Shown here in pieces: positions 3,001 to 30,651 of a stretch of 64,000 nt of DNA. Under the pieces are notes generated by a model. That model was given only the letters and a program-made list of their open reading frames with translations. It searched no databases and was not told the DNA's origin. Source of the DNA: Octopus sinensis (Eukaryota); assembly GCF_006345805.1 (NCBI RefSeq), contig NC_043000.1, positions 22,196,001 through 22,260,000 of the forward strand. Direction: 5' to 3'. Both the position numbers and the translations under genes were made by a program. Within the stretch, counting starts at the first letter, position 1. Each line of letters starts with the position of its first letter.

Positions 3001-5587
3001 GGTTTGACATGTCAGTGTGATGACACACATCAACAAAATAAAAAAGATGGAAAAAGAGAATTACACACAAGAATAATAGAGCAAGTATTACCTCTCCCTC
3101 TGCTACCATCTATATTTTAACTTTTGGGAAGGCATCAACACCCAATGAGACTGTGCATTGCAGGGGTTTATTAGGAAGTTAGACGAAATGTGAACTGTAC
3201 AAGAGGAGAGTTGGATTTGTGGAGGTACATTTTTAGTGCTATAGAACAAAGAAAGTTTGTATCTCGTAGGCAGTTCCATTTATTCACATTTCAGATCATC
3301 TGAAGATGAGTTATAACTCAAATACACTATACAGAACAAATATGCTGTGGAAACACAGTTCCCCTCCCCTTCAGGTAGTCATTGGTTGGACAATGACTTA
3401 TTGGGGCAGTAATTTATTGCTTGATGCCTTTTCTGTCACCAACCTTTACTTCTTTTTCAAGTATTTATTCAACTAGTCTTTAAAATCACAGCTACAGCAT
3501 GTAGTTTTTTTTTGAAGGATGTAAACAGATGCTCAAATGGTGCCAGAGATGCAAAAGTAAACACACACACACACAGCTTTCATACAGTTTCCTCTCTACC
3601 AATTACATTTACAAAACATTGGTCAACCAGTACTTTTGTTGATACTAGGCCAAGATACCCTACATTGGGATAGAACCTGAAATCACATAGTTAAAAAGTG
3701 TATCTTGTAACTCTACAGCTGTGTGTGAATATGACTACATACATTTACTTTAGTGTGTATATGTTTAGACATATTTGAATATATGCTTGCATGTGTGTAT
3801 TACTAGTAATTTAATACAAAATGCCAAACTTGAAATTGGTAGCATTTACACTAGAGCTAAAAACAATTTCGAAATTATGAGCATATTTACTGAGTTTTGG
3901 GTTTAAAAAGGTGGGGGGACTCACATTCATAATCACCTTCTACTTATGGTACATACATGTGCCAATGTAAATTACAAACGTGTGCGCGCACACATACACT
4001 GCTCATAACTACACATAAATATAGACAAAATGCCATTATTGCTTCCCTGAATCATTCATTCTGATAAAAGTTGGGTCCTTAGTTAAGACAATACTTATTT
4101 CCCCACCATCTCCAATATCATTTTTATTTTTGGCATAATGTTAGTTTTCCTTTTAGTCCACATTTTCAACACTCTACTTCTATCTTGTGCTTCTACCATA
4201 AACTATGTTACCATGCATTTCACTAATCCTTTCACATTTTTATCTAGTTTTAAGTGCTTTTGATAATATCTGTTACTGGTGGTTAACATATGGTTAAACA
4301 TAGGCAAAATAAGTTGATATTGCACTTTTTCTTCTTCACTTTGTTATCTTCATTTTGTCATGGAAGCTGGTAACTAAATTTGTGGCTGGCCAACATTTAG
4401 ACATGTTTGTGTGCTGATGCACCAAAAATGAAAATTTAATTTACTTACACTTTCTATAACAAGATTGTAATGCTTTTTTCTGCATGTTTCACTTCATTCT
4501 TCACTACATCTATTTATTTTTCCATATATATATATGTGTGTATGTGAGAGAGGGAAAAAGACTGAGGGTGCAGTTAGTGTAGAATCAAAATTTTGAACAT
4601 ACTTGGAATTAAATAAAGCATGGTTTTTTTTCTTCCTTTTTTTTTTTTTAAATTAAATATACCATTAGGGACTGGCTACTGAATGTGCGCGCGCGCGCGT
4701 GTGTGTACGTAATCAAGGTCTTTTTGGAATGTTTTTATTTCTCTTTTCATTAGGGAAGATATTTCCTTAAATACTTCCATGTTGAGGGTCAACCATGAAC
4801 TGAACCTTAAATACCTGGCAGCCCTGCATTTGTGATTTAACTAAATTTATTGTCATTGAGATATATATTTTTAACTTGTAATTCAATATGATTGTCAGTG
4901 TTATTTTTATTTATTTATTTTTGCTAAAATTGCATCATTGATATAACTTCTTTTTGTATATTTATATGTATTCTTTGAAGCTATTCTATACAATTAAATA
5001 TTCATTTTTATTTCTTTAGTTCATTTTGTAATATTTAATTCTATTGCTACATTGTTTTGTTAAATATATACATTCTTGCCTTTTAATTTTGTCATAATGA
5101 TATTTAAATGCTTTATTAATATTATTAGTAAATAGCTTTTATTCAATTATGCTGATTTCAGTTGTATGATAAATATTTTTGGTGTAAAAACAATCCATTC
5201 ATAAGCAATTTAATAATTTATTGATACTGCATGAATAATTAAATTCTTAAAATATTGATCCCCACTTGGCTTTAAAGTGATCTTATATGTCTCTTATCTC
5301 TCAATATATATAAATATATCTATATCTATATACATTTGTTTTTTTGAAATCTTTTGTTGCTTGTATGTGACACTATCTTTACTTGGCCTTGCCTACCCTT
5401 GTTTATCTCATATGTACCCTGAATTGGCTGGCCTCACTGTTGCGGCATTGAAAAATTCGGTGCTACGGATGTGAACGAACTCTACTGCTGCTCACCCATC
5501 TGATTGATACGTTCGCTTGCTGGGGAATGATATGTGCTGCTGAATGAATGAATGGGGGATGAAATACGTTGGGGCGGACACAAACAG

Positions 5588-5684
5588 CAGGACCACCCTG
5601 AACTCATTGCTGGAGCGCCCTGCATCGAGGACGACGAAGATGGTCACCTGATCTATCACCCGGGAGACGTTCTTCAGGCTCGAT
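5588..5684 (+). CDS. CLK2: CLK exon equivalent to vertebrate exon 4 ([33 protein letters not shown])
   Basis: Conserved DDxxGHLIY motif. Donor GAT|GTACTC at 5685, phase 1, matches the next exon. The start is uncertain: NAGNAG acceptor (5588 or 5591) or an in-frame ATG at 5552. Confidence 0.8.
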
Positions 5685-8600
5685 GTACTCATCATTTCGT
5701 AACGTTTAGCCTAGGATATTATTTGACTTCTTTTTTTTTTTTTTTCATTTTTTTTTTCCATTTTCCTTAATTTTTTTTTTCTCCAATTTTTCCCAAAAAT
5801 GTATTAATGTTTTTGTTTATCTTTGTTTCTTTTACCCCTTCCCCCAATTTTCTTCTTAAATCCTAAAATTCAACTTTCTTTATTTCTCTCTTTAACATTT
5901 CCTTATCTCTAATCTAATTTCCCCATCTATTGTCATTTTTATTCTTTCTATAAGAATTTAAAATTTTCAAAATTTGGGTTGGGGGATATCCAAAATTACA
6001 CATTTTTCTTGATTTAAATTTATCCTTAAGTTTTTTTTTATGCCTATTGTATATGTGATTGTTTTTATCTTGGTCTTCTAATTATTGGAAGATCAACTAT
6101 ATTTCAACCATGCCATCTTTTGTAGGCATTAGTTCTATTATTTTTAATTGAAATATAAACTGCTGAAAAATGAATGCATTTTTCATTCCTTATAAACATT
6201 TCCCCATAAAATATACTTAAATCTAATATTTTAGTATTTTATGGATTAATTAAAAGAATAATTAAAAAATTTTAATTACTCTTTGAATATGCATTAAAAT
6301 TAAATAAAAGGATAGATATAAATAATGGCAATAACCGAAAGCTTAGTGAAATTTTAATTTCATAATCTTAATTTAAAAGATGGGGTAATAATTGCTAAGT
6401 TTTATCTTGAAATACAATTAGGACAGATTAATTTTTAAATATAGTAATTGTTTGGATAGAGTTAACAAATCTTAGTTACAATCACTGAGTAGTTGTTAGT
6501 TTAATTTTTTTTTAATTCTCATATTTTCAATATACTTTTTTAGATTTAAACTGTGTTGTAGAAATAGTAAACTTGAAATAATCCTAGTTTTAATACTAAA
6601 TGATTAATTAATTTAACGATGTTCAGTGAATTTAAATTATACTGAAGATATTTCCATATCCTTTGTTTATATATTATTTTTTGTTATTATAAACACTTGA
6701 AACAAGAATTTACATCTTCCACGTCTGCAGAGTAGCTTAAAAATCAAGTGTTGTATATTAGACTTTGGCTAAACTACTTTTCCCTGTATGAAATGTCTAG
6801 CATATTTTCGTTTCTAAATCAACTGGGGCGATAGCCTTTTTAGTTTCAATTTCTCCAAAACATAATTTATCTCATAAAATTTTTTTTTTTATGTTTCATT
6901 AAATTCTCCCACCTTTTGATAAATTATTTATTTTGATTTTAAGAAATTTAATTGAGGATTGGGTCCATTTGAGTATCTTAAAATTCTTTTAGTCTCCCTC
7001 CCCATCCCTTTTTTTTTCATTTTCCTCTTTAATGCTTTCTTGAAACTGTATAGGTAAATTAAATTGTATTGGCAAATGGATGATTCCCTGTCCCTCTTCC
7101 ATCCAACAAACTACTGTTCTTGTATATTCTTAAATTGTGTGTGTATGTATGTATATATATATATGTATATACATACATATATATATATATATATTTTAAA
7201 TTTTCAGTCCTTAATGTTTTACATGCCTTAGAAACATATCTGATACATTGAACTGAATATAACTACGAAAATTAGAATTTGTTTCATTAGATATGTCAAA
7301 ATCTTTAAGGACACATCTGACATTTTCATACAATATTGGAAGACACTGTGATGTGTACAGATAAATACACACCTTAGACATTTTTTAACGAAGACTTTAA
7401 TGTATTCATTATACTTTTCAACATCATTTCAGAACAACAACACTAGCTTTTATTTAAAAAAAAAAATACTTTTGCATTTTTATATGTCCATACATATATA
7501 GCTTATAGCTTAAGAAGCTAGTTGAAAATCAATTACTAGTTGAAATATATTAGGATACATTAAAGCATTTACTATAAAAAACTATTTTAAAGTTCTCTGA
7601 CCTCTCATATGTGAGGTGCTTTATTTGGATACTTCAGTGCATATTTGATAGCTTAAAATATATTTGTCATAAGTCTTATTCATTTACCCCAAGTATGAAG
7701 CTAATTTATCTACTTCAAAAGTGTGTTAAATCTATCCTAATGGATGAAAACTATATTACTGTAAAACTGTAACTTACTCTCATCCATTGAGCCTTTCAGT
7801 TTTCAAAATAAGATAAATACTGTTTTTATGTAGTTTCGCTGCCAGCCTCTTGTTGCATTGCTATGAAGTGTTTTTCTAAACTGGTAATTAGCCAGTACCA
7901 CTTGTCATATACTAGGGATTATTTGAGCGTTATATTTAATTTCAGATGAAATTATTCAGACCCTTGGTGAAGGCACCTTTGGGAAATGTGTTGAGGTGAA
8001 GGATGTTGCGAGGTAGGTTCTTTAGACTAAGGGAATTTTCTTCATATCTAACATCTTTCTCTTTTTGCAGCAACAAAGTTCAATTTTAAATGCTAGCATG
8101 GTCTTCTTGTTTATTATTTGCTATTTATGAAACGTTTATGCTTAAACGCCCATTGTTTTTTTGCATAACTTTTATTTTTCCTGCACTTCATTTATATTTC
8201 TCACATGAAAATATGACCATTTCTTGTTATGGTCTTTGGCTAAAATTTGCTTTATTTTATTTTATTTTTGGCTGTAGAAATGCTTTTTTAGCTGGGGGTT
8301 AAAAAAAAGTTGCATATGTTAAATGAAGATATCTTCTCTATTTTGTGTCATAAAAGCATTTTCATCCAGTTCCATAAGAATCTCCATCATTCTGATATGT
8401 TGCAACAGTCTATAAACGGTGCATAAAAATGAATCTTGCTTTTCATGGTGTTGCTGAAGCTAGACTAAAGAGTCCTTACTTAATTGTATTGGTGAATTAT
8501 GTTTTTCTGAGTGAAAGTATTTGTAAACTATCAGATAAACTGTAGGATCATTCAGCATGAACAGTGCTGATTGGATATTAGCAGACTAGCTTCCACTATT

Positions 8601-11600
8601 TATCTTTTTTTAACCCTTTAGTATTTATTGTCAAATGTAATGCTTGTTTATTCACATTGCATTGAATTAATCAAGCTCAAGGGGTGTCAGGAAAAACGAG
8701 AATATAGAATAATAAATGTTAAGTTACTTTAGAATTATGAATCTCATCTGATAATTGGAGAGTCTTTATGCAGCTACTTGAACGTCTAGAAGAAATGGCC
8801 AAATTGCCTTAAAGCAAAATGCCAAGATGTGATACCAGGATAATATTGAATGATGCTGTCCTTGATGTTAAAAAAAAAGAAAAGACTGAATGATGATGGC
8901 TTGAATGCCTTTGACAATAACTCTACTTGACCAAGGTTGATTTGATACTAAACAGCACCAACTATTATGTCATTTTGTTAAATTTTCCACCCTATGGTGT
9001 TAGTATTTCATTATGGTTGTTATTGACGTATAGTTAATGTTACAAGTATTCTTAGCTTGCTCAGAGCAAGAAGGAAGAAATTGGAAATGCTCTGTTGTAA
9101 ATGAAGGGCTATTGTTACTGTAAGAGTTGACAGTTTAATAGTCATGTAGCAATGTAGTTGATATAATGTTCATAAAAATAGATTTGCAATTGCTAAACTT
9201 TTGTACTTTTTGGAATGGAGCACCATCAAAATAGGATGGTTACTTGATCTATTAGAAGGTTGAAATGTGCTAAAATCTTAGAAATATTAATGCACAGTAT
9301 ATATGCTGTGTAATCAAAAATAAAAATTGGGAGTCTTTAGAAACTTTTCATGTAGAAGAATATTGTGAATTGATTTAATGAAGTTATTTCCTATAATAAT
9401 GAATGTATATTGAAATTATCAGTTTAGTCTTTTGGTGGTGTGTTTTCAATTATAAGAATTCATGGTGGTGAAAGAGTCTTAAATTCATTAACCATTATGA
9501 ACTCCTTGCCTTGTTCTCTTTGTTTATGGTGTGCTGGAAATTAGAATTTTTTTTTTTTTTTTACTTTTCTTAAAATTGAAAAAGATAATTATTGGTATTT
9601 TTATTCTAGGTTATGCAGCTACAAATATGTTGAATATCAAAATTTACGTGCATTTTATGCAATGCTGTTCCTCAATTCTTTCCAAGTTTTTTTTTCTTCT
9701 TTGGTTATTTTTCTTGTGCAGAGACAGATTTGTAAATTAGGGGCGAGGGTTGTGTTTTCTTATAGTGCAAAGAGGTGTTAGCTATTTGAAAGAATTCCTT
9801 GGTTGGGGACATTTGATATCCCTTTCACAAGATGGTCTTAAAATCGTGTGTAATATGTTCCTGATCCCTGCCACCATCTCTTAGTTTCTTAGGCAAATCT
9901 AATTGAGATCTCTGAATCTTCTTTCCTATATCAATAAATGCATAATTAATACCTGTCTTTAATTTTTTATATTGCTGTCTCTAGTAGATATAATTTTTTG
10001 TTTTACACTGAATAGCATAGTTTCTTTTGTATGTGTGTATGTATGTGCTTAAACAGGTTTTAGCTATTTCATAGCTTTCATGCTTGATTTTTTCAGTTTT
10101 AAAGCATGGAACTTGGACAGTAGGTAAAACCTCGGTTTAGAGAAATATCTGAATATTTTCATGGACTATTTTCCATTTTAGCTTGCAAATTTTTTTTATC
10201 GTGTGTGTATGTAAGAGAGATATAACCTTAAGGATAATTTAGGAATCTATTTTCATAATTGATTCTTTGATAATATCTATACGAGTATTTTTTTTTTTGT
10301 TTATGTGTAGCTTTGTTGTATAGATACCGTTACAAATTCATGTCCTTAATTCATGACTGTGAAAGCGAACCTGTTTGTTTACAATATACATCCCCGACAC
10401 AGTTTGAGGTTTGTTGCAGCTGAATATATATTGATATACATTTTGTTAACTACCACTATTGCTGCAGCTGATTTAAGTTTTCAGAATGTCAAATTAAAGG
10501 ATATTTCTCTTGGATGTAACCCCCCCCCCTCCGTATCTCCCATAGTTTGCTTATGAAAGAAATTTTGAAAATAGTACTGCTTGTTAATCACAAAATAACT
10601 GTCAATTGAAGTGCCTCTAGTTTCCTTCAATGAATTATGTATACTTCATTTTTGGTTGCTATTTGCAGATCATTAGTTTGGACTATTGAGAGTTAATTGT
10701 CTTTGACATAAAAAACGTGTGACTAGATACCAGTGGATAATACTTCAGTTTGTTGATCATTTGTTTACTCTCAATTTTTATGCTCTTTATAATAGCTTTG
10801 GATACAAATACTGCACCATTTGAACTGTTCTTGCTTGATAGTTTCTACAATTCTACTTTGCAGCCAATATCTGTAAGAAACAGTAGATAAGCAGTCATTA
10901 GTTGTATAGTTCATGGCTGTATAGCCAAGCCTATTTTTATTTAATTTAATGAGCTACTATCTTTACTCAGTAGATGGAACACTGTTATCTGTCTACTAGA
11001 TCTTGAGTCATGAAGGCAGATTACACTGGTGATGTGTTGTTTTTCAAACCAAAACACTTAATTCTTCTTAGTTTATTGTGATAAAAGATACCAGGCCTTA
11101 AGTTATCTGTAACAAACTCGCTATTCAGCACAGCTGATATCTCTTTCTCATTTGCTTATTGTTACAGAAATTAGATGAACATCAAAAGGCGTTTTACTTC
11201 CTTTTTTTTTTTTAAATTTAAGCTGGGCCTAAGCACTTAAAAATTTTCCTTCTTCCTGCTATTGTTTGCTAGGGTTGTTGCTTGCACTCTGTAGGTTTTC
11301 AAACATATCTTTAAATGATTTTGTACTTCAGTTTTAATAACTCATGTACATTTTGCTATTTTCTATTGATTTTTTTATTGCAAAAATGAAAGGTTGTGTG
11401 AGTGTATGTTTGCAGCATATGATCTCTTTTGTCAATTCCCAGTTTTGCAAAACTATTGAATACTTACAAAAGGAAGCCATGGTAGTTTCTAAAAGTGCAT
11501 TTCCACTTACTTGTACACAAGAGAGAGAGAGAGAGATTATAATCTTTAATAAAAAAAGTTCTTCACACAGGCCAAGATTTTACTTATCTAATGTGGATAT

Positions 11601-14600
11601 TCTTTTGTTTCACTCATGCTGGAATATCACCTTCAGAGGTTTTTCTTAAATCACTAAATTACAGGACAAGTAGACAACACGTGCATGCACACATGCTGCA
11701 GGCTCCTGCCCATTTTCATTCTGCCAAATTTCATAGATGTCTTTCTATGAGGTTGCATACAAGTCACTTGCCAAAACTGCTGTGTAGTGGAGGTCAAACC
11801 CAGAATCACATTTGCACAGTAAACTGTCTAACTATGCTGGCACGGGCATCAAATTTATAAAGTTGGGCAAATATGTAATGTGTTGTTATTCTCAAAATGT
11901 AATTTATTTCATTGGAAATTGAAAAAGTTCCATCTGCCAAAGAATGATTCTCACTACACACACACATATATATATATGGTTTCTAAACTTAAGTTACATC
12001 CTTTAACCAAAGAATCAGAATCTCTTTCGTAACAAAATTCCTATAACAATGCACAAAGTACTGATAGTCAGGCTGTCTATTTAGGTCACAAAAGGTCAGG
12101 ATGTATAGTAAGATACTTGCTTTGTAACAATCTACTTGTAATAATGTGATAAAATGTTTAGAAGTAAAGATGAGGCTAAATAGCAAAGTGTGAAAAATAA
12201 TGTACAAGTGTATTGTTTTTGTTTCGTATACATTTTTTGTATTTTTTAATGCTCATCTCTATAATTCTGTTTACTCTGCATTTTATGAGCATCACTTCAC
12301 AATACCATAAACTTTTTTGTTTAAATACTGCCTTTCATATAACTGAGTTCTCTTCTCTCTCTTTCACACACATACACACACACTATAAATTTAAAAATTG
12401 CCTGAGTTAATGGCTTCTTAAATAATGATTTTATTGTTTATTAAATAGTTGTTTTATTAGTGTGATAACTGTTTGATACAGTATACTAAGTAAGATTATA
12501 CTATATAAGAAGAAACTATATATATCTATATATATATAATTTAATGGCTGATTCCCATAGTGGCCTGGGTTGAAAGGTTTGACAAGATGTGGTGAGTTGG
12601 AGGACTGCATCATGCTCCAGCATCTACTTTGTCATGTTTTCTACTCTTGTAGAACACCAACCACTTGACATTGTATAGGATTTTTTCATGGTACTGCACT
12701 AGTGAAGATCACCTTGTAGTTGCAAAGCTAAAGTGGCCCCTATAACCAAGGAAGAGTAGGGCAGTGATTCTAGGCAAAGGGATAAGGCAACACACACACA
12801 CAAATACTGTGTATGTGTGTAGTATCAGTGCTGAATTCAGAGTTGTTTGAATCACTGTTTGTTCTGGATTTCTGCCCTCTGAGTTCAAATCTCAACCAGG
12901 TCACCTTTGTCAGCCATACTTCTGAGCTCATTAAATATATAGCAGTCTAGGGTGATGAACTAGTGGATTGTTAGAACATTGACACAATGCTTTGGGGTAT
13001 CCATTTGGTACCATGCATTCTGCATTCAGATCTCCTCCCTTTAATATATGGGTTCTCGGCGACCAGGCAAAAAGCCAAGCTATATATAATTATGATTCAT
13101 TCTGTTGTTAATTGTGATAATTCAAGTGAGTAAAAAAAAATAAACAACATATGCAACAAATGAAAATGAATAAACATTGGGTACACATTTGCCTTTCCAT
13201 TTAAACTCTATTACATGTATTGAGTACTCTCTTGTTTGTAATCCTCAAACATGTGTGAATTGTTATTATAATTATGCTTCCTTTGTAATTTTGATTTTTT
13301 AATATTATCTACTGACTTACCCTGCATAATTGTTAGTAATACATGCTAATCCCTGAAGAATTTATTATGTTTATTCTTGCGTTCTGTTACAGATGTTTGT
13401 GAAAGAAACTTTTACACATTTATGTTTGCTTTTGTATAAGATAATAACAATAGGATGGAGACTTTGCTGACTACCATTCATTACGTTGCAATCTCTAAAA
13501 TTTCTAGCTAAACAGTTTTTTCATTTAATGAATGTAGAATCATCAAAAACCTGCTTTGTTATTTAAATTTATATAACAATTTCATAAAAATTTAATGCAA
13601 TATACTTGGAAATTAGAAAGTTTATTACCTGATGGAAAGTAAATCTGTACTGTGAAATCTGCATATCGATTCTCCCTCCCATGAAGTGTGCCATTAAAAA
13701 AAAAAAAAGTTAGTTTTGAATTTCTTCAACCCCCCCTTCCCGAAGTAATGTGTTATTTATACAATTTTGGTTTTATGTAGTGAGTATTTTGTTTATTTTT
13801 CTTAGGTTTTTATCTTTTTGCTGTGATTTGATATAGTACCAGCTTTAAAGAACCAATGTTTCAATTATTCATTCTAGTAGTACCTATTTATAGAGAGTAT
13901 TTTTCCTTTGCCTTGTTATCTTGTCTGTATTCTTTTGTAATACTGTAATGAACTTAGCTAATAGGTTACTAAGCCTAACTACATCGGCCACATGATTGAA
14001 GGTTATTTCAGTTAATTTTCTGATAACATAAATATTCCAGTTGTCTAAGCAGTTTTTACCACCAGAGCCATTTTCAACAAGCTGTACAGCTACTTCAGTT
14101 CTCTCCTACTAAGTGCCTCTATCCCCTCTCCATATACAATATATTTAGGCTGGCAGAGGGAACTAAGCTGTACACATATTACTCACCATAATAGGAGATA
14201 GTGACAAGTACTTCCCTTAGTCCTTACACTTCATATAATTTTAGTCCCCCCCCTCGCCGCCGCCACCATCCCTTCCTCTTGTCTAGAAATTTGAGCTAGA
14301 TTGCTCTTTCCTTTTTATATGAACGTAACTAACTCATTTTAATAGTAAATGTTGTTAGATGTCTTAGTTTCCCTTGTTTTGACTTAGTAAGATTGTATTT
14401 AAAAAGTAAATAAACAAAATACTGACATCTATTTTTGATAATTGATTTCTTCTATGTAAAGTCCTAAAGATTGAGTAGCTGATGAACATTTTGTTCATGC
14501 CTTTTTCAGAATAATTAATGGTGTTAAGGAATGAGAATCAAATTCTGATCTTAGTTAAATTAATATTCGGTTATAGATAATTTGTATATAATTATCATTT

Positions 14601-17600
14601 TGAATATTTACACAGCAAATAGCAAAAATTCTCAAGATGTTTAAAGATGATTAAATTGTTGAGATTACACCCACTTTGCAACATTCATGTAGGTCTCATT
14701 TACTAGTGTTGATTTTCTAACTCACATTTTAGGTTTTAAACAAATTAATAATCTTTTAAATTATTGGTACATGTTCTAATAAAGCAGTTACTCTTCCAAC
14801 TAGTTTCTCCAACTTTTCTCCAAGTTATGGACATTAAATTTACTCAGTCACTCTCTTCACAAGCTTTCCATAAATGCATGTGCTGCAATTAATTTTGTTT
14901 GTGAAAAAGCTTTGAATTTTTGTTTTTTGCAAGCCGACGTTCAAGATATTCCAGGCAACGCTCTCGTGGGCCGTAAGTAGTTCTATGCTGATGCAAATGG
15001 TTGTGTTAATGCTGCCAATCACACTCCATACCCACTTCCAGCCATATCTTACAGGAATTATTTACCTGTTATACTAATATTCTATGAGACTAATTCAAAT
15101 AATTATTTTGTAATATGTCTTCTTGAATGGTCTTAACAAGGTGTTATTTAGTTTCTTGTGTATTTCTACAAACTTAGAATTCTAATATTAGAACAGATTG
15201 AAATATATATTTTGTGTGAATTATAAAAATAAAAAACAAAAAATTGTATATCAATGAAGTAAGTTTTGGTGAATCAAGTAAGTTTTGGTGAATTGTAGCC
15301 TATTTTCTCTCTCTTCTCTTGACATATTTTATCAACATTTTACTGCATATTACAATGTTTGAGTGATATATGTTTAAGATTACTCCCTTTCTTAATACAT
15401 CCTTTTATGGGTGTATTGAAATGTCTATATCAATTACATTTAGCATGGGGGAATTAGACACAATACAGCATTTTTTGTTTTTTTGTACCTTAATTCTGAT
15501 TTCAATAATTAGTCAAAAAATTTGTGGATATTGCATGTTTTTTCTGTTCCTCGCCATAGTAACATTTTAATATTCTTTTCCAATTATTTAATATTTCAAA
15601 ATTAAGTACATTCCTTCCTTTTCCTCCTCCTCCTGATAAAACAAGCAGTTTTATGGGATTAATTATAATGATCATAAAATGTGATCCATTCTCTGATTTT
15701 GAGTTGATTAAAAGTGCATGAACGATGAAATTTTATGTGGAGTTTCAAGTATAAAGATATTGGTTAGTATGTCATCCAGAGTATTCTTTTACTGGTTTCA
15801 GTCTTTAAACTGCGACCATTCTAGGGCACTCTATTTGTTTTTGTCAGTTATATTAATGCCCTTACTTATTCTTGTACTTCTTTTATAGATGTCTTTATTT
15901 CAACATCTAAGTTCACCTATTGAGTTAAACTCACTAAAGGTGGATATAAATACCACAATGTACCTGCACTGATATACACATTTGTAATTTTTTTTGGTCT
16001 TACATAAAAGATGCATTAGATGTATGTAGAGGTTGGTATAATTGTATGTAAGTAAGGCAGATGATTTCCTCATACATAAAAGTTTTGTATGCTTCACTTT
16101 ATATCAACAATACTTATCAGCAAGTCTAAAATAATCTACAATTATCTTTGGCTCTGGCAAGCACTGTTGGCTTATCACTCAAGCAACCCACATGCAATTA
16201 CATACATCTTACAACTTCTGCAGTTTCCACCTACCAAATTTCACTCCTAGTGCATTGGTTAACCTGAAGCTAGAAGTAATTTCTGTTCACAGTGTTGAGC
16301 AGTGGGTCAAACCTGGAAACATGTGGCTATGAAGTGAAGCTCTTAACTGCACAACCATGCTTGATAGCTTTCTGTCATTTTTTTTTATCTAAATGCATGG
16401 CTTCTCTGCATTAATTAGTGGAAAATAAATTGAAAATTCAGTTAAATGTTCACATATATAAACTATAATTTAATTTCAGTAGATTAGGCTGGGCTAATTT
16501 TTTTTACCACCCAATGAAGAATGTTTATGGAAATTTAAAACTTTTTGTCTTCTAATGATTTTATTGTCCATAAAATTATTTGGTAATTTGTCAGTGTGTG
16601 AAAAAATAAATGTGTTGATTGTGAAGACTTGAACAAAGAATTAATTCCTTCATAGTTTGGATTTCAGTTCTAGAAATGTTAAAAGTAGACAGTTTAGTAC
16701 TATATATTCTTGAATGGGCTCTATCTGGGTATTTATTGAGTATACTAGTTTCCTTGTTATATAGGATGTTTATCTTGTTGTTTAACCCCAAATCAGCTTT
16801 GATTGAGCGGGCTTATGATCAAAAATCTACTCAATCAAGATTGAAGTATTCTAAACATTACTATCCCATTGTTTTCTACGCACAGTGTACCTAGGACCAT
16901 ACTGTTTAATGTGTTGTCTCAGGTGGTATGGTGGAATTTGAGAGTGATTTAGCTGCTAATTTCTAGCCTCTTGGATGACCACAGTCTCCATCATTTTCCT
17001 TCAACTAAACAACCTGATGTTGATGGACGTGTCCACAGGATGTTATTTTCTGTTCGTTTCCAAAGAAGAGATGAAATTATATCAATGTTCTCATACATTT
17101 TTAGTGTTTGCATGTTCTACAGTACCAGTTACGCTGATGTGATTAATCAGCTTGTAATTTCCTGAACATGTTATCCTCATGGTATTACTGGTATTCAGTT
17201 CAAGAGATGTTGTTGTGGTCTGGCATTTCGGTCATCATTTTGTAGATCTGGAACTATGTTGCCCAGTGTGTCCTTCTTTCTTAAGGCAATATTGTGTGAT
17301 TAAAGAGTTGGCTGCTATTTTTAGCACATTGAGAATGACCACACAGCAGGCCCTTTCATTGCTTCAACCATTGAAGTGTTGTTGGTGATTGTTATTAATA
17401 AGAGCTTCTCATTATGAGATTTTTCTGCTCATTTTTCCAAAAGAATTTACTTATGGGACATGTATTTTATGAGAGTGTTTTTTTTTTTTTATTTTTAATT
17501 TTTATTTATTTATTTTTTTTATTACCCTATCCCACCTCTATTGTTGGCAACTTTTATTCATAATTGTTTCACATTTCTTTTCAGAAATGGTCAAATAGCT

Positions 17601-20600
17601 GCTTTGAAAATTATAAAAAATGTTGAAAAATATCGAGAAGCTGCAAAGTTAGAGATCAATGTTCTTGAGAAGTTAAAAGAAAAGGATCCAGAAGGCAAAT
17701 AGTTAGTACTCTCTCTTTCCCTCTCTCTCTCTTACTCTCTCTGTCTTTCTTTGTGTGTGTGTGTATCCAAATATACTGCAAGGTAATGACTAAATTTTTG
17801 TTTCATTTAAATTGGTGTTTGAAGGGAAAACGATGTTCAAGAAAGATTAGTAGTGGGGGGTGCATGGGTATATATGTGGCTTTCTTCATCTCTCTGGCAA
17901 AGCAAGTCAGCAGGAGGAGAATAGCTTGAAGTAGGATTAAGAAGGTGGAAAATTCCAAGTAGCATAGTTTTGTTGTAATTGTAGTAAACTTAGGTAAACT
18001 GAAAGAGAAACAGCTGGAAGAATTAGTTGGTACATAAGGGGTGGGGTACATTTTTTCTTTTCTTTAATTCTAGTTTTATTATCTATTAATAATTTTGATA
18101 TTAAAAAAAAAAAAATGCAAAAGCAAAAAAAAGTCACAGTTCAACCCAGACCATTAATCTGATTCCATAGCTGAACAATATAGAGTAAATCAATACAAGT
18201 CTTGTATATAATGGATTGGCATCAACTCAATTTGCATGTGTGTGTGTGTATATATATACATATATATTTTATTATTATTATTATTATTATATTTTGTAAC
18301 TTTTTAAAGTTAGATTTTAACCAGAGATGAACCTTCAGCTTCTCTTTGTACATAGATGCACTTTGCATCATGATAAACCCCTGCTACTTATGTCAGAGCC
18401 TATTTTAAAAATCAAAGCTGTAAACAGAACACATACAGTATGTATGTACTCTCCTTTTAACAGTCCCATAACAGTGTAAGATTTATATTATTATTTGATT
18501 TATTTATGCTCATTTACATGTCTTAAGCATGCAGTTCATGTGTTGCATTCGTGCAGGAAGCATTGCAACTTGTTTGCGCATGCATACACAAATATGAAAG
18601 AGTTGAATCTAAAATGTAAAATTTTTCAAAAACTTTAAAATATTAACAGTCTAGGGAGTGAATAGGATTACTGCATAATGATTGTTTTTTTTTTCTTTTT
18701 CTCTTTTTTCTTTGTCCAGACACAGTTTGTAAGTTTAAAATTTATAATTTCTTTTTCCATTTCAGTTTGTGTGTACGGATGCTGGATTGGTTTGATTATC
18801 ATGGGCATATGTGTATAGCATTTGATATGCTTGGTCTTAGTGTATTTGATTTTTTGGTAAGTTACAGAAGAGTTCTTTTACCAAATTTAATTTGCTATTA
18901 AACTCATGTTTAATATTTCAATTTTTTTCTTTTAATTTTTAAATTTTAATTGGTTTATATGCATATGGTATTTCTAATGCTTACGTCTGGACATGTTACT
19001 TAATGCAATTTTTTAAAATTTTCTTCTGCAGAAAGACAACACTTATTATCCATATCCTCTCGATCAAGTTCGAAATATCTCCTATCAGTTGTGCTATGCA
19101 GTAAATTGTAAGTTTCAGTAAATTTCCATTTTTATCATCCATGAACCTTTTCATTTTTATGTAGTCAGGGGAACAAGGTGTATCTGTGACTTTTGTAATG
19201 CTCTACAAGACTGAAATAAATATGATTGCTGTTTAGCTTGAATAACTGTCAATTGATATCCATAAGGAAAACATTGGTGAACTGGCTGAATTGTCACCAT
19301 ATTGGACAAAATGATTAGCATTTCTTTTGGTTCTCTACATTCTGAGTTCAAATCTCACCAAGGCCAACTTTGTCTTTCATCCCCTTGGGGGCTAATAAAA
19401 TAAAATACCAGGCTAGTACTAGGTGGGTGGTGGGGGTCAATGTAATTGACTTCCTCTTTTCTCAAAAAATTGCTGGCCTTGAAGCCCTACTATGGACTGG
19501 CATCCCATTCAGGGAGAGTATTGTAATCTCAGTTACTTACGTGCCGTTGAAACCAGCTAACTGGACTTGTGAGTCCTGAGGCTCAGGGGGTGGGGTGGAG
19601 GCATAGATAGGAAGGGTTGCTGTTCTGGGAAGATAAGGTTAGTTGGATGAGAAATGGTGGGGGGTGGGATATGCAGCCAGCTGTCTCTATAGGGTACTAG
19701 CGGTTGTAGTAGTGGCAGAAAGGACAGATTGATAAGAAAGGTTTGATTAACATAGACTTATTCCTGGAATTTAACTTTGATGAATACATTTATTCTACAT
19801 CTTACCAATTGAATTAGTTTTCATTCTTAGATTATAATTTAACAATAAAATTTTCCCATATTGGTCTTTTCTTTCTTTCAGTAAACAAATGTTTAATTCA
19901 TTCAAACTAAAATGGTTAGAATTATTAGATGGTTGTTTGTTTTGATTATAAAGTTATAATCTGTGTGTGTTTATACAAAACAGTAAATAGCTTTTTCCCT
20001 CTTTTTTTTTTTTTTTTTTTTAGTCCTCCATGAGAACCAGCTCACGCATACAGACTTGAAACCAGAAAACATACTTTTCGTTAACTCCGATTTTGAAGTA
20101 TCATATAATGCTAAAAAGGTAATATTGTTTTTATCTGCATCTATTATAATAATAATAATAATAATAATAATAATTGTGTACAGTGCTCAGGTGCACTACA
20201 ACTCATCTAAAATGTATATATAATCAGGTGTAGTTTCGGCGGATTTCGGAAAGCATGAGGGCCTTAAAAGATGCAGTGTCATGGCAGTCAACAACTGACG
20301 CAGGCAGTTTATTCCATGCTTCAGCAACTCTGAGCGTGAAAAAATGTTTCTGAAAGTCATGGGAGCTGTATTGTTTTCTGACTTTGTAGGCATGTCCACG
20401 TGTGTTAGACACATGGAGATCAAAAAGGTGTTCAGTGTTGTTGTTGGTGAGGTGGTTGATAACTTTGTGGGTGTTTACCAAGTCCGTCGCCAAACGCCGG
20501 AGCTTCAGTGAATCCATGCCCAGGGAAACAAGGCGCTCAGAATATGGTAGGTGTCTGATGGAGGGTATGCGTTTGGTTGCACGTCTCTGGACAGATTCCA

Positions 20601-23600
20601 GGAGGTCAATGTTCTGTGCAAGATAGGGGCTCCAAACTGATGATGCGAATTCCAAGTGTGGTCGTACCATAGCTGTATACAGTTTTAAATAGATGGCTGG
20701 AGAGCGGCTAACAAAAGACCTGCTGAGTGATGCCAAGACACCCTCGGCCTTCCTGACAATCTTAGAGATATAATAATCAATCTGTACATAATTGAGAGCA
20801 TGTGCTTGATTGTAATTATTTTCTCATGAAATATGTTTTTCATCTTTGTTTCATATTTTACATTTTCTAGAGGCGAGATATGCGGAGAGTAAAAAATACA
20901 GATATAAGATTAATAGACTTTGGATCTGCAACATTTGATCATGAACACCACAGCACTATTGTATCAACGAGGCATTATAGAGCTCCTGAAGTTATTTTGG
21001 GTAAGTGTATTATAGTTTTCTTTTACTTGGGAATTGCTAGCCTTGTTTATATTTATTGCAGTTTTATAGATAGTTTCTCAGACAATACAAAAGGAATTAA
21101 TTTGTGGCAGCTGGAGAAGTATCGAAAATGATTAGCTTGATAAATGAACCCAACTCCAGACACAATTCAACTGCCAGTACATGACTGATTTATTATTGTT
21201 ACACTATCCATCCATTCAGAAACTTAGGACTTAAAGATTAAAGGGTGAAAATTTGGAAAACGGGTCTTGACATTTTGAAAATATAAAAATGTGATTTATC
21301 ACCACCACCCACTTATATGAAGTGTTTGTCTTTATTGCATGTTATTTTAATTGTACTTTCTGGAATGTTGTGGTTTTTCCAGTAGAAGTTCCGTATTACA
21401 GTTGAAGTGGTAAAATAACTTTAATTTGAATGGATTTAGATTCGAAACTTTTGGAATAAAACTTGGCTAGTTTGGTAAAAGCAATGCACATTCACTTTGG
21501 AATGTGGTTGGTTCCCTATTGAAAATGTTGTCCCGCTGGAGCCCGCATTCTGGATTCACCAGATACTGATGTAATGATTCTAATGATACTTGAGCATTTA
21601 AGTTATCATTTACCTAGTTTTGTGAGTATAAATGGGACAACATGCTGACGAGGTCAGTGCAACTGTAAGTCTTGTTTCTGAGATCAATACACTTAGCTCT
21701 CAACAGACAGATTTACCTGGTTTTAAGTATTGCAGCTATGGTGATTCATCGTCATCGTTGTTTAATGTCTGTGTTCCATGCTAGCATGGGTGGGGCAGTT
21801 TCACAAAAGCCGGCCAGGCAGAAGCCTACACCAGACTTCTATGACTGTTTTGACAGGAATTTTACAGCGGGATGTCCTTCCTAACACCATCCACTCAGCA
21901 GAGTGGACTTAGTGCTTTTTACATGGCACAAGCACAAGGTCAGTTTTGGGAAAGCTTTTACAGCTGGATGCCCTTCTGAACACCAACTACTTTACAGTGT
22001 GGACTGGGTGTTGTTTTAAGTAGCACCTGCACTGACAGGGTCACCAAGTATCTGCAAGACAAAAAAAAAAACCTACTTTCAAGAGGAGAGGGTCATTGGA
22101 GGAAGTGATCTTGTGATCTAGTGTCAGATGATGAAAGGTTATAGTGAGACAGAGACATAGAAACTGTAGAGGAAGTACAGAGAGATCTGTGTACCAACTT
22201 TGATTCTTCACCTGGGCTAAGTTGCAACAATAACTGGAAGTGAACATCAACTAAATATATGCTTGAGATTTTGAGAACAAATGTATCATGATGAGCTAGG
22301 ACTTAATAGCAGCTGTATAAACCATGCCAAAGCAGTCACTGGAGCAAATTCTGTCAAACTACGCAACCCATGCCAGCATGGAACATGATGATAATGAATC
22401 CATTAGTTTTAAATTCCATAAATCTTAGTTGAAACCTTTCAGTGAAATTTTCTTTGCTGACTGTATTTGCCTCATACAGCGATTGACCTTGATCTTAAAT
22501 AAGAAGTAAAGCTAAATTTATTCAGCCCTTACATTAAGAATTTATTTTGTCTTGCAATGATTTGTATTTATCCAGCAATACTTTTTTTGTATTTATATGT
22601 ATGCCAGCATGGAAGGCAGACGTTAAACAATGATGATGATGGATCATTTTTCTGTGTCTCTGCAATAATTTTCTGCATAACTGATATTTTTCTCTTTGTA
22701 ATTTTAGAATTAGGTTGGTCTCAACCCTGTGATGTGTGGAGTATAGGTTGTATCATGTTTGAGCTATACACAGGATACACATTATTTCAGGTAAATTGCT
22801 TTAATTACTTAATTAAATGTTTATTAAATTATATAATAGTATGATGTTTATTAATTAAACTTTTTGGCTATCAAAGGTACACTTACTTGCTATTTGCTTT
22901 TTTACAAGTATTCTTTTCAGCCTCTATATGAATTTTATCCTTAATTTGATTTTACTGTCATTCTTCCAAACTATTATGACTATCTGTTACTGTTGTTCTA
23001 TAGTCAATAGAATAGGCAACATTATTGATTTAGTTTAGTATATTTTCTTGATATTATACATAGACATGCTGACGTGCATTTTTGTTTTTTAATTCTACTT
23101 CTTAGCAAAATGTTATTTTGTTTAATATTATTCTTGTAAATCTTTGTATTTTATCTTAAATATATTTAGTGTGAACACACAATCAACATTGTATTGGTTG
23201 CTTTGACATTTACTTTTTTGTTTTGGGTTAGACACATGACAATAAGGAGCATTTGGCAATGATGGAACGGATACTGGGCAGTATACCATATCGGATGGCA
23301 AAAAGATCTCGGTAAGCTTATTGACTCAGAGTTGATATTGGACATTAGAAAGGATGGCTATAGAACAAAAATTAAACAAAAATCTAACTTAAATAGGTGA
23401 AATAATATTTTAATTGATAAACTATGATTACTTTATAAATATATTTTTCCTAATTTTAAATTTGACAGTAATGTTGAGTGGGGTGGGGTGTTGCATAATG
23501 AATCATTAACATTTATTACAACATATATTACTTTAATTGTTAAGCAATTATATTTGCAAAAGTGTATCATAACATTTCATATTGGTATTTCTTTTTATTA

Positions 23601-23831: not shown

Positions 23832-26182
23832 TACATTAGTACATAACTGCCAGGAGATAAAAGCATGCTAGATTTTTTTAGGGTATTAATTTCTTATATA
23901 ATTCAATAGTTAGTTACAATTAATAGTGTAGGGGTAGAATATAGCAATGTAATTACCTGCTTATTAAAAGAATGCAGAAATGTTGAAATGTACTCAAGAT
24001 GTCAATAAAAGTTGTATTAACAATATGATAAAATGATTTCATAAATTAGTTTATACGGTAGTGTCATGGCTCAAATATGAGTGAAGATAAAATGTAATTA
24101 CTTGCATATCAAACAAATTGTCTGTTTTTATAACAGTCCTGTGTTACCCCTTCTTTTAAACTTTAAATTGCATTTTATGAACTGTAGCATTGTTGGTTAC
24201 AGTTTTCCAGTGGGATAATCATTGGTTCACTGTCTATTAACAATGGTGAGAGTGACAAGAGGTTGTCAGTGGAACTTTGGCTGAACAAATAAATACAAAT
24301 TATTTTTGTGTAAAAGCACCAGTTTGTTTGTTTCTCCAAAGTGCAATTAACAAAAAAAAAAAAGACAATTTACATGGGATGTATTTTGTATTCCTGTTGT
24401 AATATTTAGTAAATTTTAAGTGATTGTGTGGCATCTTATGTGATTTACATTTAGTAGATATTACATGAGTCAAAGACATTGTTGATTTTGAAACACAAGT
24501 TTAAGAAAATCCATAAATGATGATTTATTTTCAAATTATAATAACCCTGAAGTAAACTTTAATTATAATAAAATTCACTTGTCATTTTGTTCCTATTGTT
24601 TTAAGAACAAATTACTTCTGGCATGGTCGCCTTGATTGGGACTCGACTACTTCTGCTGGGAGATATGTAAGGGAGAACTGTAAACCACTTTATGTAAGTA
24701 CATGCTCAGCCTTCTCTGTAACTACTACCATAAGTGCACTATAGTGCATGACTTACTATTTTCCAACTGTAAGAAACCACTGAAGTGTATGACGTTTGGG
24801 CAATGTGCCAGCAGGTAACAACTAATTTGTTCACAACACTTTTGGTGTGTTGTCTTTTAGGTAGTAGATACATTTCTAAACTTAAGCTCTTTCTAATGTA
24901 AAATCTCTCTGTTGAAAACAAAGCTTCGTTTTTTGGGGGATAAACAAAATTGCCAAGTTTCATTTATTTATTGTGTAAACTTAATAAAAAAAATGTCCTA
25001 AAATATATAAGCTATTTTCTCAAGGTGATTTTTTTCAAAATTTTCTAAAGTTATATCTGAAGAAGTAAAATCTTATCTTGTAAGCCTTCTTTGGGAGGTG
25101 ACATTGATATTTCTAGAATAGTTATATTTTGGTGTAACTCTATTTTAATCCATTCCCGATTAGATAGTTTCCTATTTACTCTTTCAATAATCTTAATTCA
25201 CAATTTTTAATTTAAGCTCAACATCTAAAATCTTTTCATTGGGGACTAATGTTGTTTACTTGCTTGTTCAAATTTCCTTTCAATTGTTTCTTCAGTTAGC
25301 CATTTAAATTTGGTAGTAGTTGCCAGTGGGGCAATGCATGTGTTTTGTGGATCCTTGAATCTGCCTGCAAGTTCTGTTTGTATTTTTATTCTTCTGACCA
25401 AACTTCTAATTTGTTATTTATTAATCTCCCAGCATATTTAGTACAAACTCTTGGTAATAACCCAAGTTCCCACCCCATAAATTTTTGTCTCTTTAGTTGA
25501 TTAGTTTACCACTTTTCTTTTTGCTGCCAGCATTCATAATTTGTTTCAATACTAATATAACTTACCTTTTATTAGTTGTTTCCATTGAACTGAATGTAGT
25601 TTGACTTGGGTAGCATGCTGCATGGCTATTCTCATTAGCTCATACGGCTTTGTTTGTTTGTTTGTTTTTCTAATCCCTAACCCCACACTCCCCATATTTA
25701 TCTCCAAAGAAAAAGCAAGTATTTCTACCATGGGAAACTGGACTGGGATGAAAAAAACTCATCTGGGCGGTATATTCGGGAAAATTGCAAACCACTTAAG
25801 GTGAGTAACAAGTTATTTAGCTGATTCCTTTTCAAAATGTGTTTAACCAATGGGAGGAGGAGGAGGGGAATTAAAGTTAATATTTCATAATTTTTGTAAG
25901 CATTGTGGATTTGTAATTTACAAATCTCCTTTTACATTGGATTGTTCCAGATAGTGGATTGGCAGAAATAGAGGAGTTTAAGACAAATGCCTTGTGGTAT
26001 TTTGTTATGACTCTTTACAAACCCTGCCGAGTTGAATTTGGCTTTTTATTGTTCTGGGACTGATAAAATAGTATCAGTCAAGTAACATGGATCATTTATA
26101 AACCTCACTAGGATTTGTGCTTATGTTAGGAATGAAGGCAACAACTTAATATGTAAACAGAATACATACACTCACACGTGTA

Positions 26183-29400: not shown

Positions 29401-30038
29401 TCCATTCTTTCTGGTGACCATTAACATCATTGTGTCACTGCCCTCTTTATCATAGCCTTTACTGATTCAGTTGGAAAATTTAAGAGAACATGATTTTATT
29501 TAATTGAATCTGAAAATTCTGAAGTTTAATTTTCTGTAGGGAGTATGCAACCAAATCAGTTCATATTAGCATGTTTTTGATAAGTAATTCCTTTCATTCT
29601 CTCTTTATATATATATTGTATGGTTCACTTGAATAACGTCTTTCTATTACTGATCCAAGAGTTAAGATGTCTAAGGGTTTCTCTAGGAAATATGCTTATT
29701 TCAAAAATTGTTGGCATTCTTTCTGCAAGGGGTAAATTCCCTTCTCTGCTTTCATGCTAAACTTCTCAATTTACCCCCCCCCCCCCGGTCTCTCCACAGG
29801 CATTGTTCTCTTTTATTTTTATCTCACTGTCGAACCTTGTTGTCCCCATGCTTGTTACGTCACAAATATGGATGTAATATGTTTTAGCAATATCAAAATC
29901 TTTATACCAGAAGAATTTATCCAGCTCCTTAGGATTAGATCATGTTTGAACCCCCCCCCATACATTTTCATATCATTTTCAGTTAGAGAAACATTCTTTT
30001 ACCAGTATCATATTCGATTGTGTCTATATTACATTTAA

Positions 30039-30069
<31 letters not shown>

Positions 30070-30087
30070 ATATATACATATATACAT

Positions 30088-30118
<31 letters not shown>

Positions 30119-30456: not shown

Positions 30457-30554
<98 letters not shown>

Positions 30555-30618
30555 TATATATAATATATATATATATATATACATATATTATATATATATA
30601 TATATACATATACATATA

Positions 30619-30651
<33 letters not shown>

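What the first reader, a model, noticed from the sequence alone, without database searches (positions are those of the whole stretch)
14870..15020. Hidden RS-rich microexon that inserts [14 protein letters not shown] into the kinase N-lobe
Seen: a 39-nt frame-preserving exon with a consensus donor (CC|GTAAGT). It lies in a 9.5-kb intron, is invisible to the ORF track, and encodes an Arg/Ser peptide placed between the Gly-loop strand and the AALK lysine strand. Two internal AGs (14945, 14954) are in the same frame and would give 27- and 18-nt versions. A TGCATG (14875-14880) and several TGCT/TGC motifs flank it. Known: CLKs recognise and phosphorylate RS repeats, and their own RS domain is normally N-terminal; TGCATG is the Rbfox element. 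Inference: a regulated, possibly neural, exon giving the catalytic domain its own RS module for autophosphorylation, speckle targeting or pseudo-substrate action. I do not know of this insert in other CLK/Doa proteins.
Basis: partly seen in the sequence, partly recalled or inferred. Interest (0 to 1): 0.8.

Follow-up and report, generated by a model that had tools for sequence, protein, structure and literature searches.

The report
Cephalopod CLK kinase Arg/Ser microexon
The 39-base exon is real: it is an already-annotated, cephalopod-conserved alternative exon that puts a short, floppy Arg/Ser-rich loop on top of the catalytic domain of an octopus splicing kinase (CLK2/Doa), but what it does and where it is used remain untested.

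Summary
Window 14934-14972 is a 39-nt frame-preserving exon (AG acceptor, GTAAGT donor) in the 9.57-kb intron between the Gly-loop exon (7946-8012) and the AALK-lysine exon (17585-17701) of an octopus CLK2/Doa gene. It replaces one Arg with [14 protein letters not shown].

It is not hidden. The window is Octopus sinensis DNA, and six RefSeq isoforms of this gene carry exactly this insert while others skip it. The one O. bimaculoides model also has it.

Argonauta hians keeps a 39-nt orthologue with both splice sites, an open frame and mostly synonymous changes. It sits in one of three alignable islands in the intron. A spliced mRNA from an unidentified cephalopod in a marine metatranscriptome carries a 33-nt version at the same junction. 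About 345 non-cephalopod CLK/Doa sequences lack it.

The insert maps to the beta2-beta3 hairpin turn and is predicted disordered.

Not supported or untestable here: neural or Rbfox regulation, the 27- and 18-nt variants, and any function. My inferred reading is a phosphorylatable RS-like interaction or localisation handle, most relevant to isoforms whose N-terminus has no RS domain. This is a new member of a known kind (lineage-specific cassette microexon), of moderate interest.

The parts
7946..8012 (+). Constitutive exon encoding (Y)[21 protein letters not shown](R/S). It covers beta1, the Gly-rich loop and beta2, ends in phase 2, and has donor GTAGGT at 8013.
   Evidence: sequence. Identical peptide in Octopus CLK2 proteins P0121 and P0122.
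14834..14933 (+). Conserved upstream intronic flank of the microexon. It contains TGCATG (14875-14880), a T-rich tract (about 14917-14928) and the acceptor ..gcaAG (14932-14933).
   Evidence: Identity to Argonauta hians is 86.5% for -50..-1 and 70% for -100..-51, while most of the intron does not align at all.
14934..14972 (+). 39-nt alternative cassette microexon. It encodes [14 protein letters not shown] (the first and last codons are split across the junctions). It has four SR dipeptides, one conserved Tyr and 4 CpGs.
   Evidence: sequence and chance tests. Exact peptide in RefSeq isoforms P0241, P0246, P0252, P0254, P0255, P0259 and in O. bimaculoides P0247. Orthologues in Argonauta and in mRNA L001/L002.
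14973..15186 (+). Donor GTAAGT (14973-14978), invariant in Argonauta, and a moderately conserved downstream intronic flank.
   Evidence: Identity is 62-70% when an 18-nt indel is counted.
17585..17701 (+). Constitutive exon encoding (R/P)[38 protein letters not shown](Y). It covers beta3 with the catalytic lysine and helix alphaC.
   Evidence: Alignment to human CLK2 structures.

Best explanation
SHOWN. Window 14934-14972 is a genuine, evolutionarily conserved, alternatively spliced 39-nt cassette exon of the octopus CLK2/Doa (LAMMER) kinase gene. Inclusion replaces one Arg in the beta2-beta3 hairpin turn of the kinase N-lobe with the 14-residue peptide [14 protein letters not shown]. This peptide is basic, carries four SR dipeptides and an invariant Tyr, and is predicted to be a disordered surface loop. 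The exon exists in octopods (Octopus, Argonauta). A 33-nt form exists in a more distant cephalopod. It was not found in any other animal CLK sampled.

INFERRED. The loop sits on top of the N-lobe. It does not replace any catalytic residue. The most likely effect is therefore not a change in the catalytic machinery. Instead it would add a short, phosphorylatable RS-like motif. Such a motif could be a substrate for CLK itself or for SRPK-type kinases. It would act as an interaction or localisation handle, through RS-RS contacts with SR proteins or with the kinase's own N-terminus, or through nuclear or speckle targeting.

This would matter most for isoforms that start with the alternative MKVDVL... 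N-terminus. That N-terminus has no SR/RS dipeptides. The one directly observed mRNA combines that N-terminus with the microexon.

My confidence is about 0.95 that the exon is real and alternative, and about 0.35 that the handle function is the main role.
For: Locus and annotation:
- The window is 100% identical over 10,001 nt to O. sinensis CM016862.1.
- Six RefSeq isoforms of that locus contain exactly [15 protein letters not shown]4, X11 and the listed O. vulgaris models have ...KDVARNGQ... instead.
- O. bimaculoides has identical exon DNA, and its RefSeq model includes the exon.

Argonauta hians:
- The intron holds CCGGCGGTCAAGATATTCAAGGCAACGTTCACAATCGTC, flanked by ..acaAG and GTAAGT.
- It reads [14 protein letters not shown].
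- The 5 changes in the first 11 codons are all synonymous.
- The exon lies in one of only three islands of the intron that align at all.

Independent transcript:
- mRNA contigs L001 and L002 (JGI metatranscriptome 3300018952) encode KDIE-RSRSRYSKSRGS-NGQRAALK.
- The extra 33 nt sit exactly at the exon-exon junction and share the core TCAAGATATTCC.

Position in the protein:
- The insert aligns to a 13-residue gap in the VD-HRRGGAR-VALK turn of human CLK2 structures.
- In the AlphaFold2 model the strands are 44-51 and 71-77, and insert residues 57-68 have pLDDT below 50.

Context for the inferred function:
- The MKVDVL-type N-termini (P0241, P0246, P0123) have 0 SR/RS dipeptides. The canonical N-termini have 10-13.
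- According to PMC10082069 and the abstract of bioRxiv 10.64898/2026.02.22.707342, the RS-like N-terminus of CLKs bridges kinase and SR substrates and drives oligomerisation and nuclear recruitment. CLKs recognise R-x-x-S/T.
Against: - No read-level RNA evidence for Octopus could be inspected. Inclusion there rests on automated RefSeq models.
- RefSeq pairs the exon with both RS-type and non-RS N-termini. The link to RS-less isoforms therefore rests on one assembled mRNA from another species.
- Fourteen residues is far shorter than a functional RS domain.
- The last three residues (RGP, QSS, RGS) are not conserved.
- Only one R-x-x-S site is present in each orthologue, and at different positions.
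- The upstream intronic flank is more conserved than the exon (86.5% against 74.4%). Part of the constraint is therefore on splicing regulation rather than on the peptide.
- No experiment or paper addresses the insert.
Confidence: 0.6

Rival explanations
1. Direct regulator of catalysis. The insert sits between the Gly-loop strand and the lysine strand. It would act as a cis pseudo-substrate or as an autophosphorylation switch, on its Ser residues or the conserved Tyr. It would change ATP binding, Gly-loop dynamics or substrate access.
For: The insert is flanked by the two strands that clamp ATP. It contains SR dipeptides, an R-x-x-S site and an invariant Tyr. CLKs are dual-specificity autophosphorylating kinases that recognise R-x-x-S/T (PMC10082069).
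Against: The turn is solvent-exposed at the far end of the hairpin, and its length varies naturally among CLKs (15-17 residues by my measure, up to 20-22 in a few). The insert is predicted disordered. Its C-terminal third and its length (13 against 11 net residues) vary between cephalopods.
Confidence: 0.2
2. Neural (or other tissue-specific) microexon switched on by Rbfox or by an SRRM4/eMIC-type programme.
For: The TGCATG at 14875-14880 is conserved in Argonauta within a highly conserved upstream flank. In Octopus a UGC lies just before the acceptor (TTGCAAG). Conserved intronic flanks are typical of regulated exons (established knowledge).
Against: The TGCATG count equals chance (39 against 41.5). 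The motif is upstream, which by the known Rbfox RNA map favours skipping. The nearest downstream + strand TGCATG is at 15532. The UGC at the acceptor is UAC in Argonauta, and the downstream TGCT motifs are lost there. The only direct transcript comes from a bulk plankton sample. Tissue data could not be accessed.
Confidence: 0.15
3. A tolerated, essentially neutral splice variant with no specific function. It would be an exonised piece of intron that persists because the loop accepts insertions.
For: The loop tolerates length variation. The function is untested. The C-terminal residues of the insert drift.
Against: The reading frame, both splice sites and the R-S-R-Y-S core are retained between Octopus, Argonauta and a more distant cephalopod. 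The changes in the first 11 codons are all synonymous, and the intronic flanks are conserved in an otherwise unalignable intron.
Confidence: 0.08
4. A chance pseudo-exon, or an annotation artefact, that is never spliced into mRNA.
For: None beyond the general abundance of AG...GT pairs in long AT-rich introns.
Against: 0 of 200 shuffles gave a comparable candidate. There are independent RefSeq models in two species, a spliced mRNA with the orthologous insert exactly at the junction, and an intact orthologue in Argonauta.
Confidence: 0.02

Closest known systems
Neuronal c-Src N1 microexon (6-residue insert in the n-Src loop of the SH3 domain). Recalled from established knowledge, not tested here.
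   Same: A short, frame-preserving cassette exon that lengthens a surface loop of a folded domain in a signalling kinase. It creates an isoform with a charged insert without disturbing the fold.
   Different: The Src insert is in the regulatory SH3 domain, is vertebrate and is demonstrably neuronal. The insert here is in the catalytic N-lobe, is cephalopod-specific, is RS-like, and its tissue pattern is unknown.
N-terminal RS-like domain of CLK kinases (PMC10082069; bioRxiv 10.64898/2026.02.22.707342)
   Same: Disordered and Arg/Ser-rich. It resembles the kinase's own substrates. It is thought to bridge the kinase to SR proteins and to drive oligomerisation and nuclear recruitment.
   Different: That domain is 130-300 residues long and lies outside the kinase domain. 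The octopus canonical N-terminus has 10-13 SR/RS dipeptides. The microexon gives only 14 residues with four SR dipeptides, inside the catalytic domain.
CLK1 exon 4 skipping / intron retention (PMC10082069)
   Same: Alternative splicing of a CLK gene close to the start of the kinase domain, used for self-regulation of the kinase.
   Different: Exon 4 skipping shifts the frame and gives a truncated, inactive protein. The octopus exon preserves the frame and keeps every catalytic motif.
Family-defining insertions of the CLK kinase domain: beta-hairpin, LAMMER motif, MAPK-like insert (PMC10082069)
   Same: Insertions in the canonical kinase fold thought to shape substrate interaction.
   Different: All three are constitutive, structured, in the C-lobe and conserved across eukaryotes. 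This one is optional, disordered, in the N-lobe and restricted to cephalopods.
Drosophila Doa isoforms with alternative N-termini, and the SRPK spacer insert. Recalled from established knowledge, not tested here.
   Same: SR-protein kinases diversify localisation and partners through non-catalytic segments. The octopus gene likewise has RS-type and non-RS N-termini.
   Different: Those segments come from alternative promoters or from a large constitutive spacer between kinase subdomains. They are not a cassette microexon in the beta2-beta3 turn.

Membership tests
CLK / LAMMER (Doa) dual-specificity kinase (host gene) | Invariant [11 protein letters not shown] motif in the C-lobe | tested here: met
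   The exon at 23232-23314 encodes [26 protein letters not shown].
CLK / LAMMER (Doa) dual-specificity kinase (host gene) | Full-length kinase-domain similarity to solved CLK structures and to annotated CLK2/Doa proteins | tested here: met
   Human CLK2 6fyk gives E = 3.4e-171 over the whole domain. The best database hits are Octopus CLK2 isoforms, then mollusc and arthropod CLK2/Doa.
CLK / LAMMER (Doa) dual-specificity kinase (host gene) | Disordered RS-like N-terminal extension | tested here: met
   The canonical isoforms have 10-13 SR/RS dipeptides upstream of DHPEL. Their exons lie upstream of the window. The alternative MKVDVL and MGDEIRW N-termini have none.
Alternatively spliced cassette microexon | Very short length. 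Definitions in use range from at most 27 nt to at most 51 nt (recalled from established knowledge, not tested here). | tested here: inconclusive
   The exon is 39 nt in Octopus and Argonauta and 33 nt in the metatranscriptome cephalopod. This meets the 51-nt definition but not the 27-nt one.
Alternatively spliced cassette microexon | Canonical splice sites, frame-preserving length, open in the incoming phase | tested here: met
   AG at 14932-14933, GTAAGT at 14973, 39 = 3 x 13, no stop codon.
Alternatively spliced cassette microexon | Both inclusion and skipping isoforms exist | tested here: met
   RefSeq O. sinensis X1, X2, X6, X7, X8 and X14 include the exon. X4, X11 and the listed O. vulgaris models skip it. 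This is annotation-level evidence; reads were not inspected.
Alternatively spliced cassette microexon | Orthologous exon and conserved intronic flanks in other species; direct transcript evidence | tested here: met
   Argonauta genome. Spliced mRNA L001/L002 with the insert exactly at the junction.
Neural microexon programme (Rbfox- or SRRM4/eMIC-dependent) | Higher inclusion in nervous tissue | not testable with these tools
   No tissue RNA-seq was reachable. No exact isoform is on record in transcript assemblies.
Neural microexon programme (Rbfox- or SRRM4/eMIC-dependent) | Conserved cis-elements in the activating position: downstream UGCAUG, or UGC next to the 3' splice site | tested here: not met
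   The only nearby TGCATG is 54 nt upstream, and the count in the window equals chance. The UGC at the acceptor is UAC in Argonauta.
RS domain of SR / SR-related proteins | Extended run of RS/SR dipeptides, tens of residues long | tested here: not met
   The insert is only 14 residues with four SR dipeptides. It is best called an RS-like motif, not an RS domain.

The most novel reading that the evidence does not exclude
Cephalopods evolved a splice-selectable RS module inside the catalytic domain of their SR-protein kinase. By auto- or SRPK-phosphorylation of this loop, the kinase would become its own RS-type ligand. RS-less N-terminal isoforms could then be routed to speckles or to SR substrates, or gated, through a 13-residue switch. 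This would be a lineage-specific layer of control over the splicing machinery in animals known for unusually elaborate neural RNA processing.
Probability: 0.15. Interest if true: 0.6.

Novelty: new member of a known kind. Interest (0 to 1): 0.35.

Why it matters
CLK kinases set the phosphorylation state of SR splicing factors, and they are thought to need their long RS-like N-terminus to find those substrates. This exon gives a natural, conserved, switchable variant. It carries a minimal RS-like motif on the catalytic domain itself, and at least sometimes sits on a protein that lacks the RS N-terminus. That makes a clean experimental handle for two questions: how much RS sequence a CLK needs, and where it must be placed, for substrate recruitment, oligomerisation and nuclear targeting. 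It is also a dated example of a lineage-specific coding microexon in cephalopods. It is not a discovery of an unannotated gene feature, because public RefSeq models already contain it.

Tried and rejected
1. A short 130-aa protein search found no insert-bearing fragment. The tool returns only proteins in a length class near the query, so this said nothing. The full-length query gave the answer.
2. A degenerate DNA pattern for insert-bearing spliced mRNAs in metagenome contigs gave 0 hits, not even the known JGI contig. That collection does not hold sample 3300018952.
3. The search for related loci in the same collection returned 80 non-cephalopod CLK loci. None of the 51 that could be scored has an insert.
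4. A third protein search with the squid-like version found no further cephalopod sequences.
5. An exact look-up of six constructed isoforms carrying the 27- or 18-nt versions found none in the collection.
6. Exact look-ups of isoforms X14 with and without the exon in transcript assemblies found nothing on record.
7. An RNA fold of 14850-15030 gave z = +1.04, so there is no evidence for a structured element.
8. O. bimaculoides is too close (88-94% identity across the whole intron) to say anything about selective conservation.
9. I considered the apparent skipping of the AALK exon in the O. bimaculoides model as a kinase-dead isoform and rejected it. The exon falls in an assembly gap.
10. Literature searches (microexon+CLK2, microexons+octopus, CLK2+cephalopod) found nothing on this insert.

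Full report
**What is in the sequence**

The + strand of the window carries most of a CLK2/Doa-type (LAMMER) kinase gene.

- The Gly-loop exon is 7946-8012. It reads ...[21 protein letters not shown], ends in phase 2, and has donor GTAGGT.
- The catalytic-lysine exon is 17585-17701. It reads [38 protein letters not shown].
- The two are separated by a 9572-nt intron.
- Inside that intron, 14934-14972 reads CCGACGTTCAAGATATTCCAGGCAACGCTCTCGTGGGCC.
- It follows a T-rich tract and ..gcaAG, and is followed by GTAAGT.
- In the incoming phase it is open. It replaces the junction Arg with [14 protein letters not shown].

**Is it more than chance?**

Yes.

- Only two GTRAGT donors in the whole intron give any open, frame-preserving AG...GT candidate of 9-60 nt. 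One of them is this exon, with its nested acceptors.
- Mononucleotide shuffles give 1.7 candidates on average. 0 of 200 shuffles gave one of at least 30 nt with at least 70% Arg/Ser.
- The exon has 4 CpGs and 59% G+C in an intron of 32% G+C. Only 11 of 9533 39-nt windows reach 4 CpGs.
- It is the only ORF on the + strand of the 64-kb window with at least 9 R/S in 14 residues.

**Where the window comes from, and what the public annotation says**

- A search with the spliced protein returned Octopus CLK2 proteins as the best hits.
- Their cluster members include RefSeq Octopus sinensis isoforms X1, X2, X6, X7, X8 and X14. These contain exactly ...[26 protein letters not shown]...
- Isoforms X4 and X11 and the listed O. 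vulgaris models read ...[13 protein letters not shown]....
- The genomic locus of isoform X1 (GCA_006345805.1, CM016862.1) is 100% identical to window 7800-17800.
- The exon is therefore not hidden. It is an annotated alternative cassette exon of this very assembly.
- O. bimaculoides has identical exon DNA, and its single RefSeq model includes the exon.
- I could not inspect the reads behind these automated models.

**Conservation**

Argonauta hians is an octopod whose CLK2 protein is 95% identical to that of Octopus.

- Against Argonauta, the 9.5-kb intron aligns in only three islands. One of them is 14777-15186.
- There the orthologue is ..acaAG|CCGGCGGTCAAGATATTCAAGGCAACGTTCACAATCGTC|GTAAGT.
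- It is 39 nt, open, and reads [14 protein letters not shown].
- All five changes in the first 11 codons are synonymous. The last three codons differ.
- The 50 nt upstream are 86.5% identical and the exon itself 74.4%. Strong flank conservation is typical of regulated alternative exons (established knowledge).

A second, independent line is a pair of intron-free mRNA contigs (L001, L002) from JGI metatranscriptome 3300018952.

- They encode a 488-aa CLK with KDIE-RSRSRYSKSRGS-NGQRAALK.
- At the nucleotide level the extra 33 nt lie exactly between the two constitutive exons.
- They share the core TCAAGATATTCC with Octopus and differ by an internal 6-nt deletion.
- This protein shares the cephalopod-specific MKVDVLTAYKEWANMPT N-terminus and the j1-type exon.
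- It is more divergent from Octopus than Argonauta is. It is therefore probably a decapodiform, which is an inference.

**Taxonomic breadth**

I measured the spacing between the Gly-loop and the lysine motif.

| Set | Sequences scored | Spacing (residues) |
|---|---|---|
| Database CLK/Doa proteins | about 190 | 15-17, with a few at 20-22 and one non-cephalopod outlier at 64 (P0060); cephalopod isoforms in this set reach 27-29 |
| Spliced or unspliced metagenome loci | 51 | 15-17 |
| Further database proteins | 104 | 14-17, with two at 20-21 |

Only cephalopod sequences have an RS-type insert. I found no paper describing it.

**Where it sits in the protein**

- Against human CLK2 structures the insert is a 13-residue gap in the turn VD-HRRGGAR-VALK.
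- An AlphaFold2 model (35-sequence alignment, mean pLDDT 74) places strands at residues 44-51 (beta2) and 71-77 (beta3).
- Insert residues 57-68 have pLDDT below 50, so they form a disordered loop.
- The three family-defining CLK insertions are all in the C-lobe (PMC10082069). This one is a different, optional, N-lobe feature.

**How it most likely works (inference)**

- The loop is exposed and distal to the catalytic residues, and its length varies naturally. I therefore think a direct catalytic role is less likely than an added phosphorylatable RS-like motif.
- CLKs recognise R-x-x-S/T. They depend on their RS-like N-terminus for SR-protein recruitment, oligomerisation and nuclear recruitment.
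- The octopus gene has alternative N-termini. The canonical one has 10-13 SR/RS dipeptides. The MKVDVL-type and MGDEIRW-type have none.
- The only directly observed mRNA combines the RS-less N-terminus with the microexon. In that protein the insert is the only SR cluster.
- This fits a role as a minimal RS handle for interaction or localisation. It is one transcript, however, and RefSeq also pairs the exon with RS-type N-termini.

- TGCATG occurs 39 times in the window against 41.5 expected.
- The copy near the exon is conserved in Argonauta, but as part of a block that is conserved throughout. It also lies upstream, which by the known Rbfox map predicts repression.
- The UGC at the acceptor and the downstream TGCT motifs are not conserved.
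- The 27- and 18-nt variants are not in the protein collection on three backbones.
- No stable RNA structure is predicted.
- Tissue specificity could not be tested.

**Verdict**

This is a real, conserved, cephalopod-specific alternative microexon that is already annotated. It is a new member of a known kind. Its function is unknown but testable, and its interest is moderate.

Noticed in passing
window 24606-24693 and 25710-25800: A pair of homologous, mutually exclusive exons. They are 88 and 91 nt, in the same phase, and including both would shift the frame. They encode (R)[29 protein letters not shown] and (R)[30 protein letters not shown]. Both are used in RefSeq isoforms and both are conserved in Argonauta.
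   Followed up: partly
window 32998-33327 and 39537-39713: Two alternative last coding exons. k1 reads [25 protein letters not shown]... It has an internal donor at 33308, spliced on to ...AVHNGAQQ. k2 reads [26 protein letters not shown]...RARSHSLSR*. By my recollection k2 resembles the C-terminal end of human CLK2 and fly Doa and so looks like the ancestral type. Both are used in annotated isoforms.
   Followed up: partly
window 12036-12249 (motif at about 12080-12100): A conserved non-coding island in the same intron, 74% identical to Argonauta. It contains a perfect direct repeat AGGTCAcaaaAGGTCA, which is the DR4 nuclear-receptor half-site arrangement. The repeat is retained in Argonauta as AGGTCAtaaaAGGTCA.
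   Followed up: no
window 14085-14346: A second conserved non-coding island about 600 nt upstream of the microexon, 73% identical to Argonauta. Its indels are not multiples of three and it has no open frame. It could be a distal splicing or transcriptional element.
   Followed up: no
window 4748-5891 (exon 5552/5591-5684): A G+C- and CpG-rich 1.1-kb block, 81% identical to Argonauta. It surrounds an exon used in two ways. With the ATG at 5552 it is an alternative first coding exon ([18 protein letters not shown]..., O. vulgaris CAI9721981). From the acceptor at 5590/5591 it is an internal exon.
   Followed up: partly
L085 64158-64450 (O. bimaculoides), orthologous to window about 17480-17750: O. 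bimaculoides RefSeq XP_014781440.2 joins the microexon directly to the LCVRML exon and lacks the catalytic-lysine exon. The orthologous exon lies in a run of N, so this is an assembly-gap artefact and not a kinase-dead isoform.
   Followed up: yes
window about 29950-31600: About 1.6 kb of TA-rich microsatellite (TATATA/TACATA-type, translating as YIYIYI...) in the intron between exon j2 and exon k1.
   Followed up: no
P0324 (Larimichthys crocea CLK2 isoform X1) and P0137 (Mactra antiquata clk2): Two non-cephalopod CLK2 models have small non-RS extensions in the same beta2-beta3 turn...CLDHSSVFTHRGGSRIALK and ...KDVHRPSVQMRSNDHVALK. The turn may be a recurrent site for splice-site or exon variation, or these may be annotation errors.
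   Followed up: no
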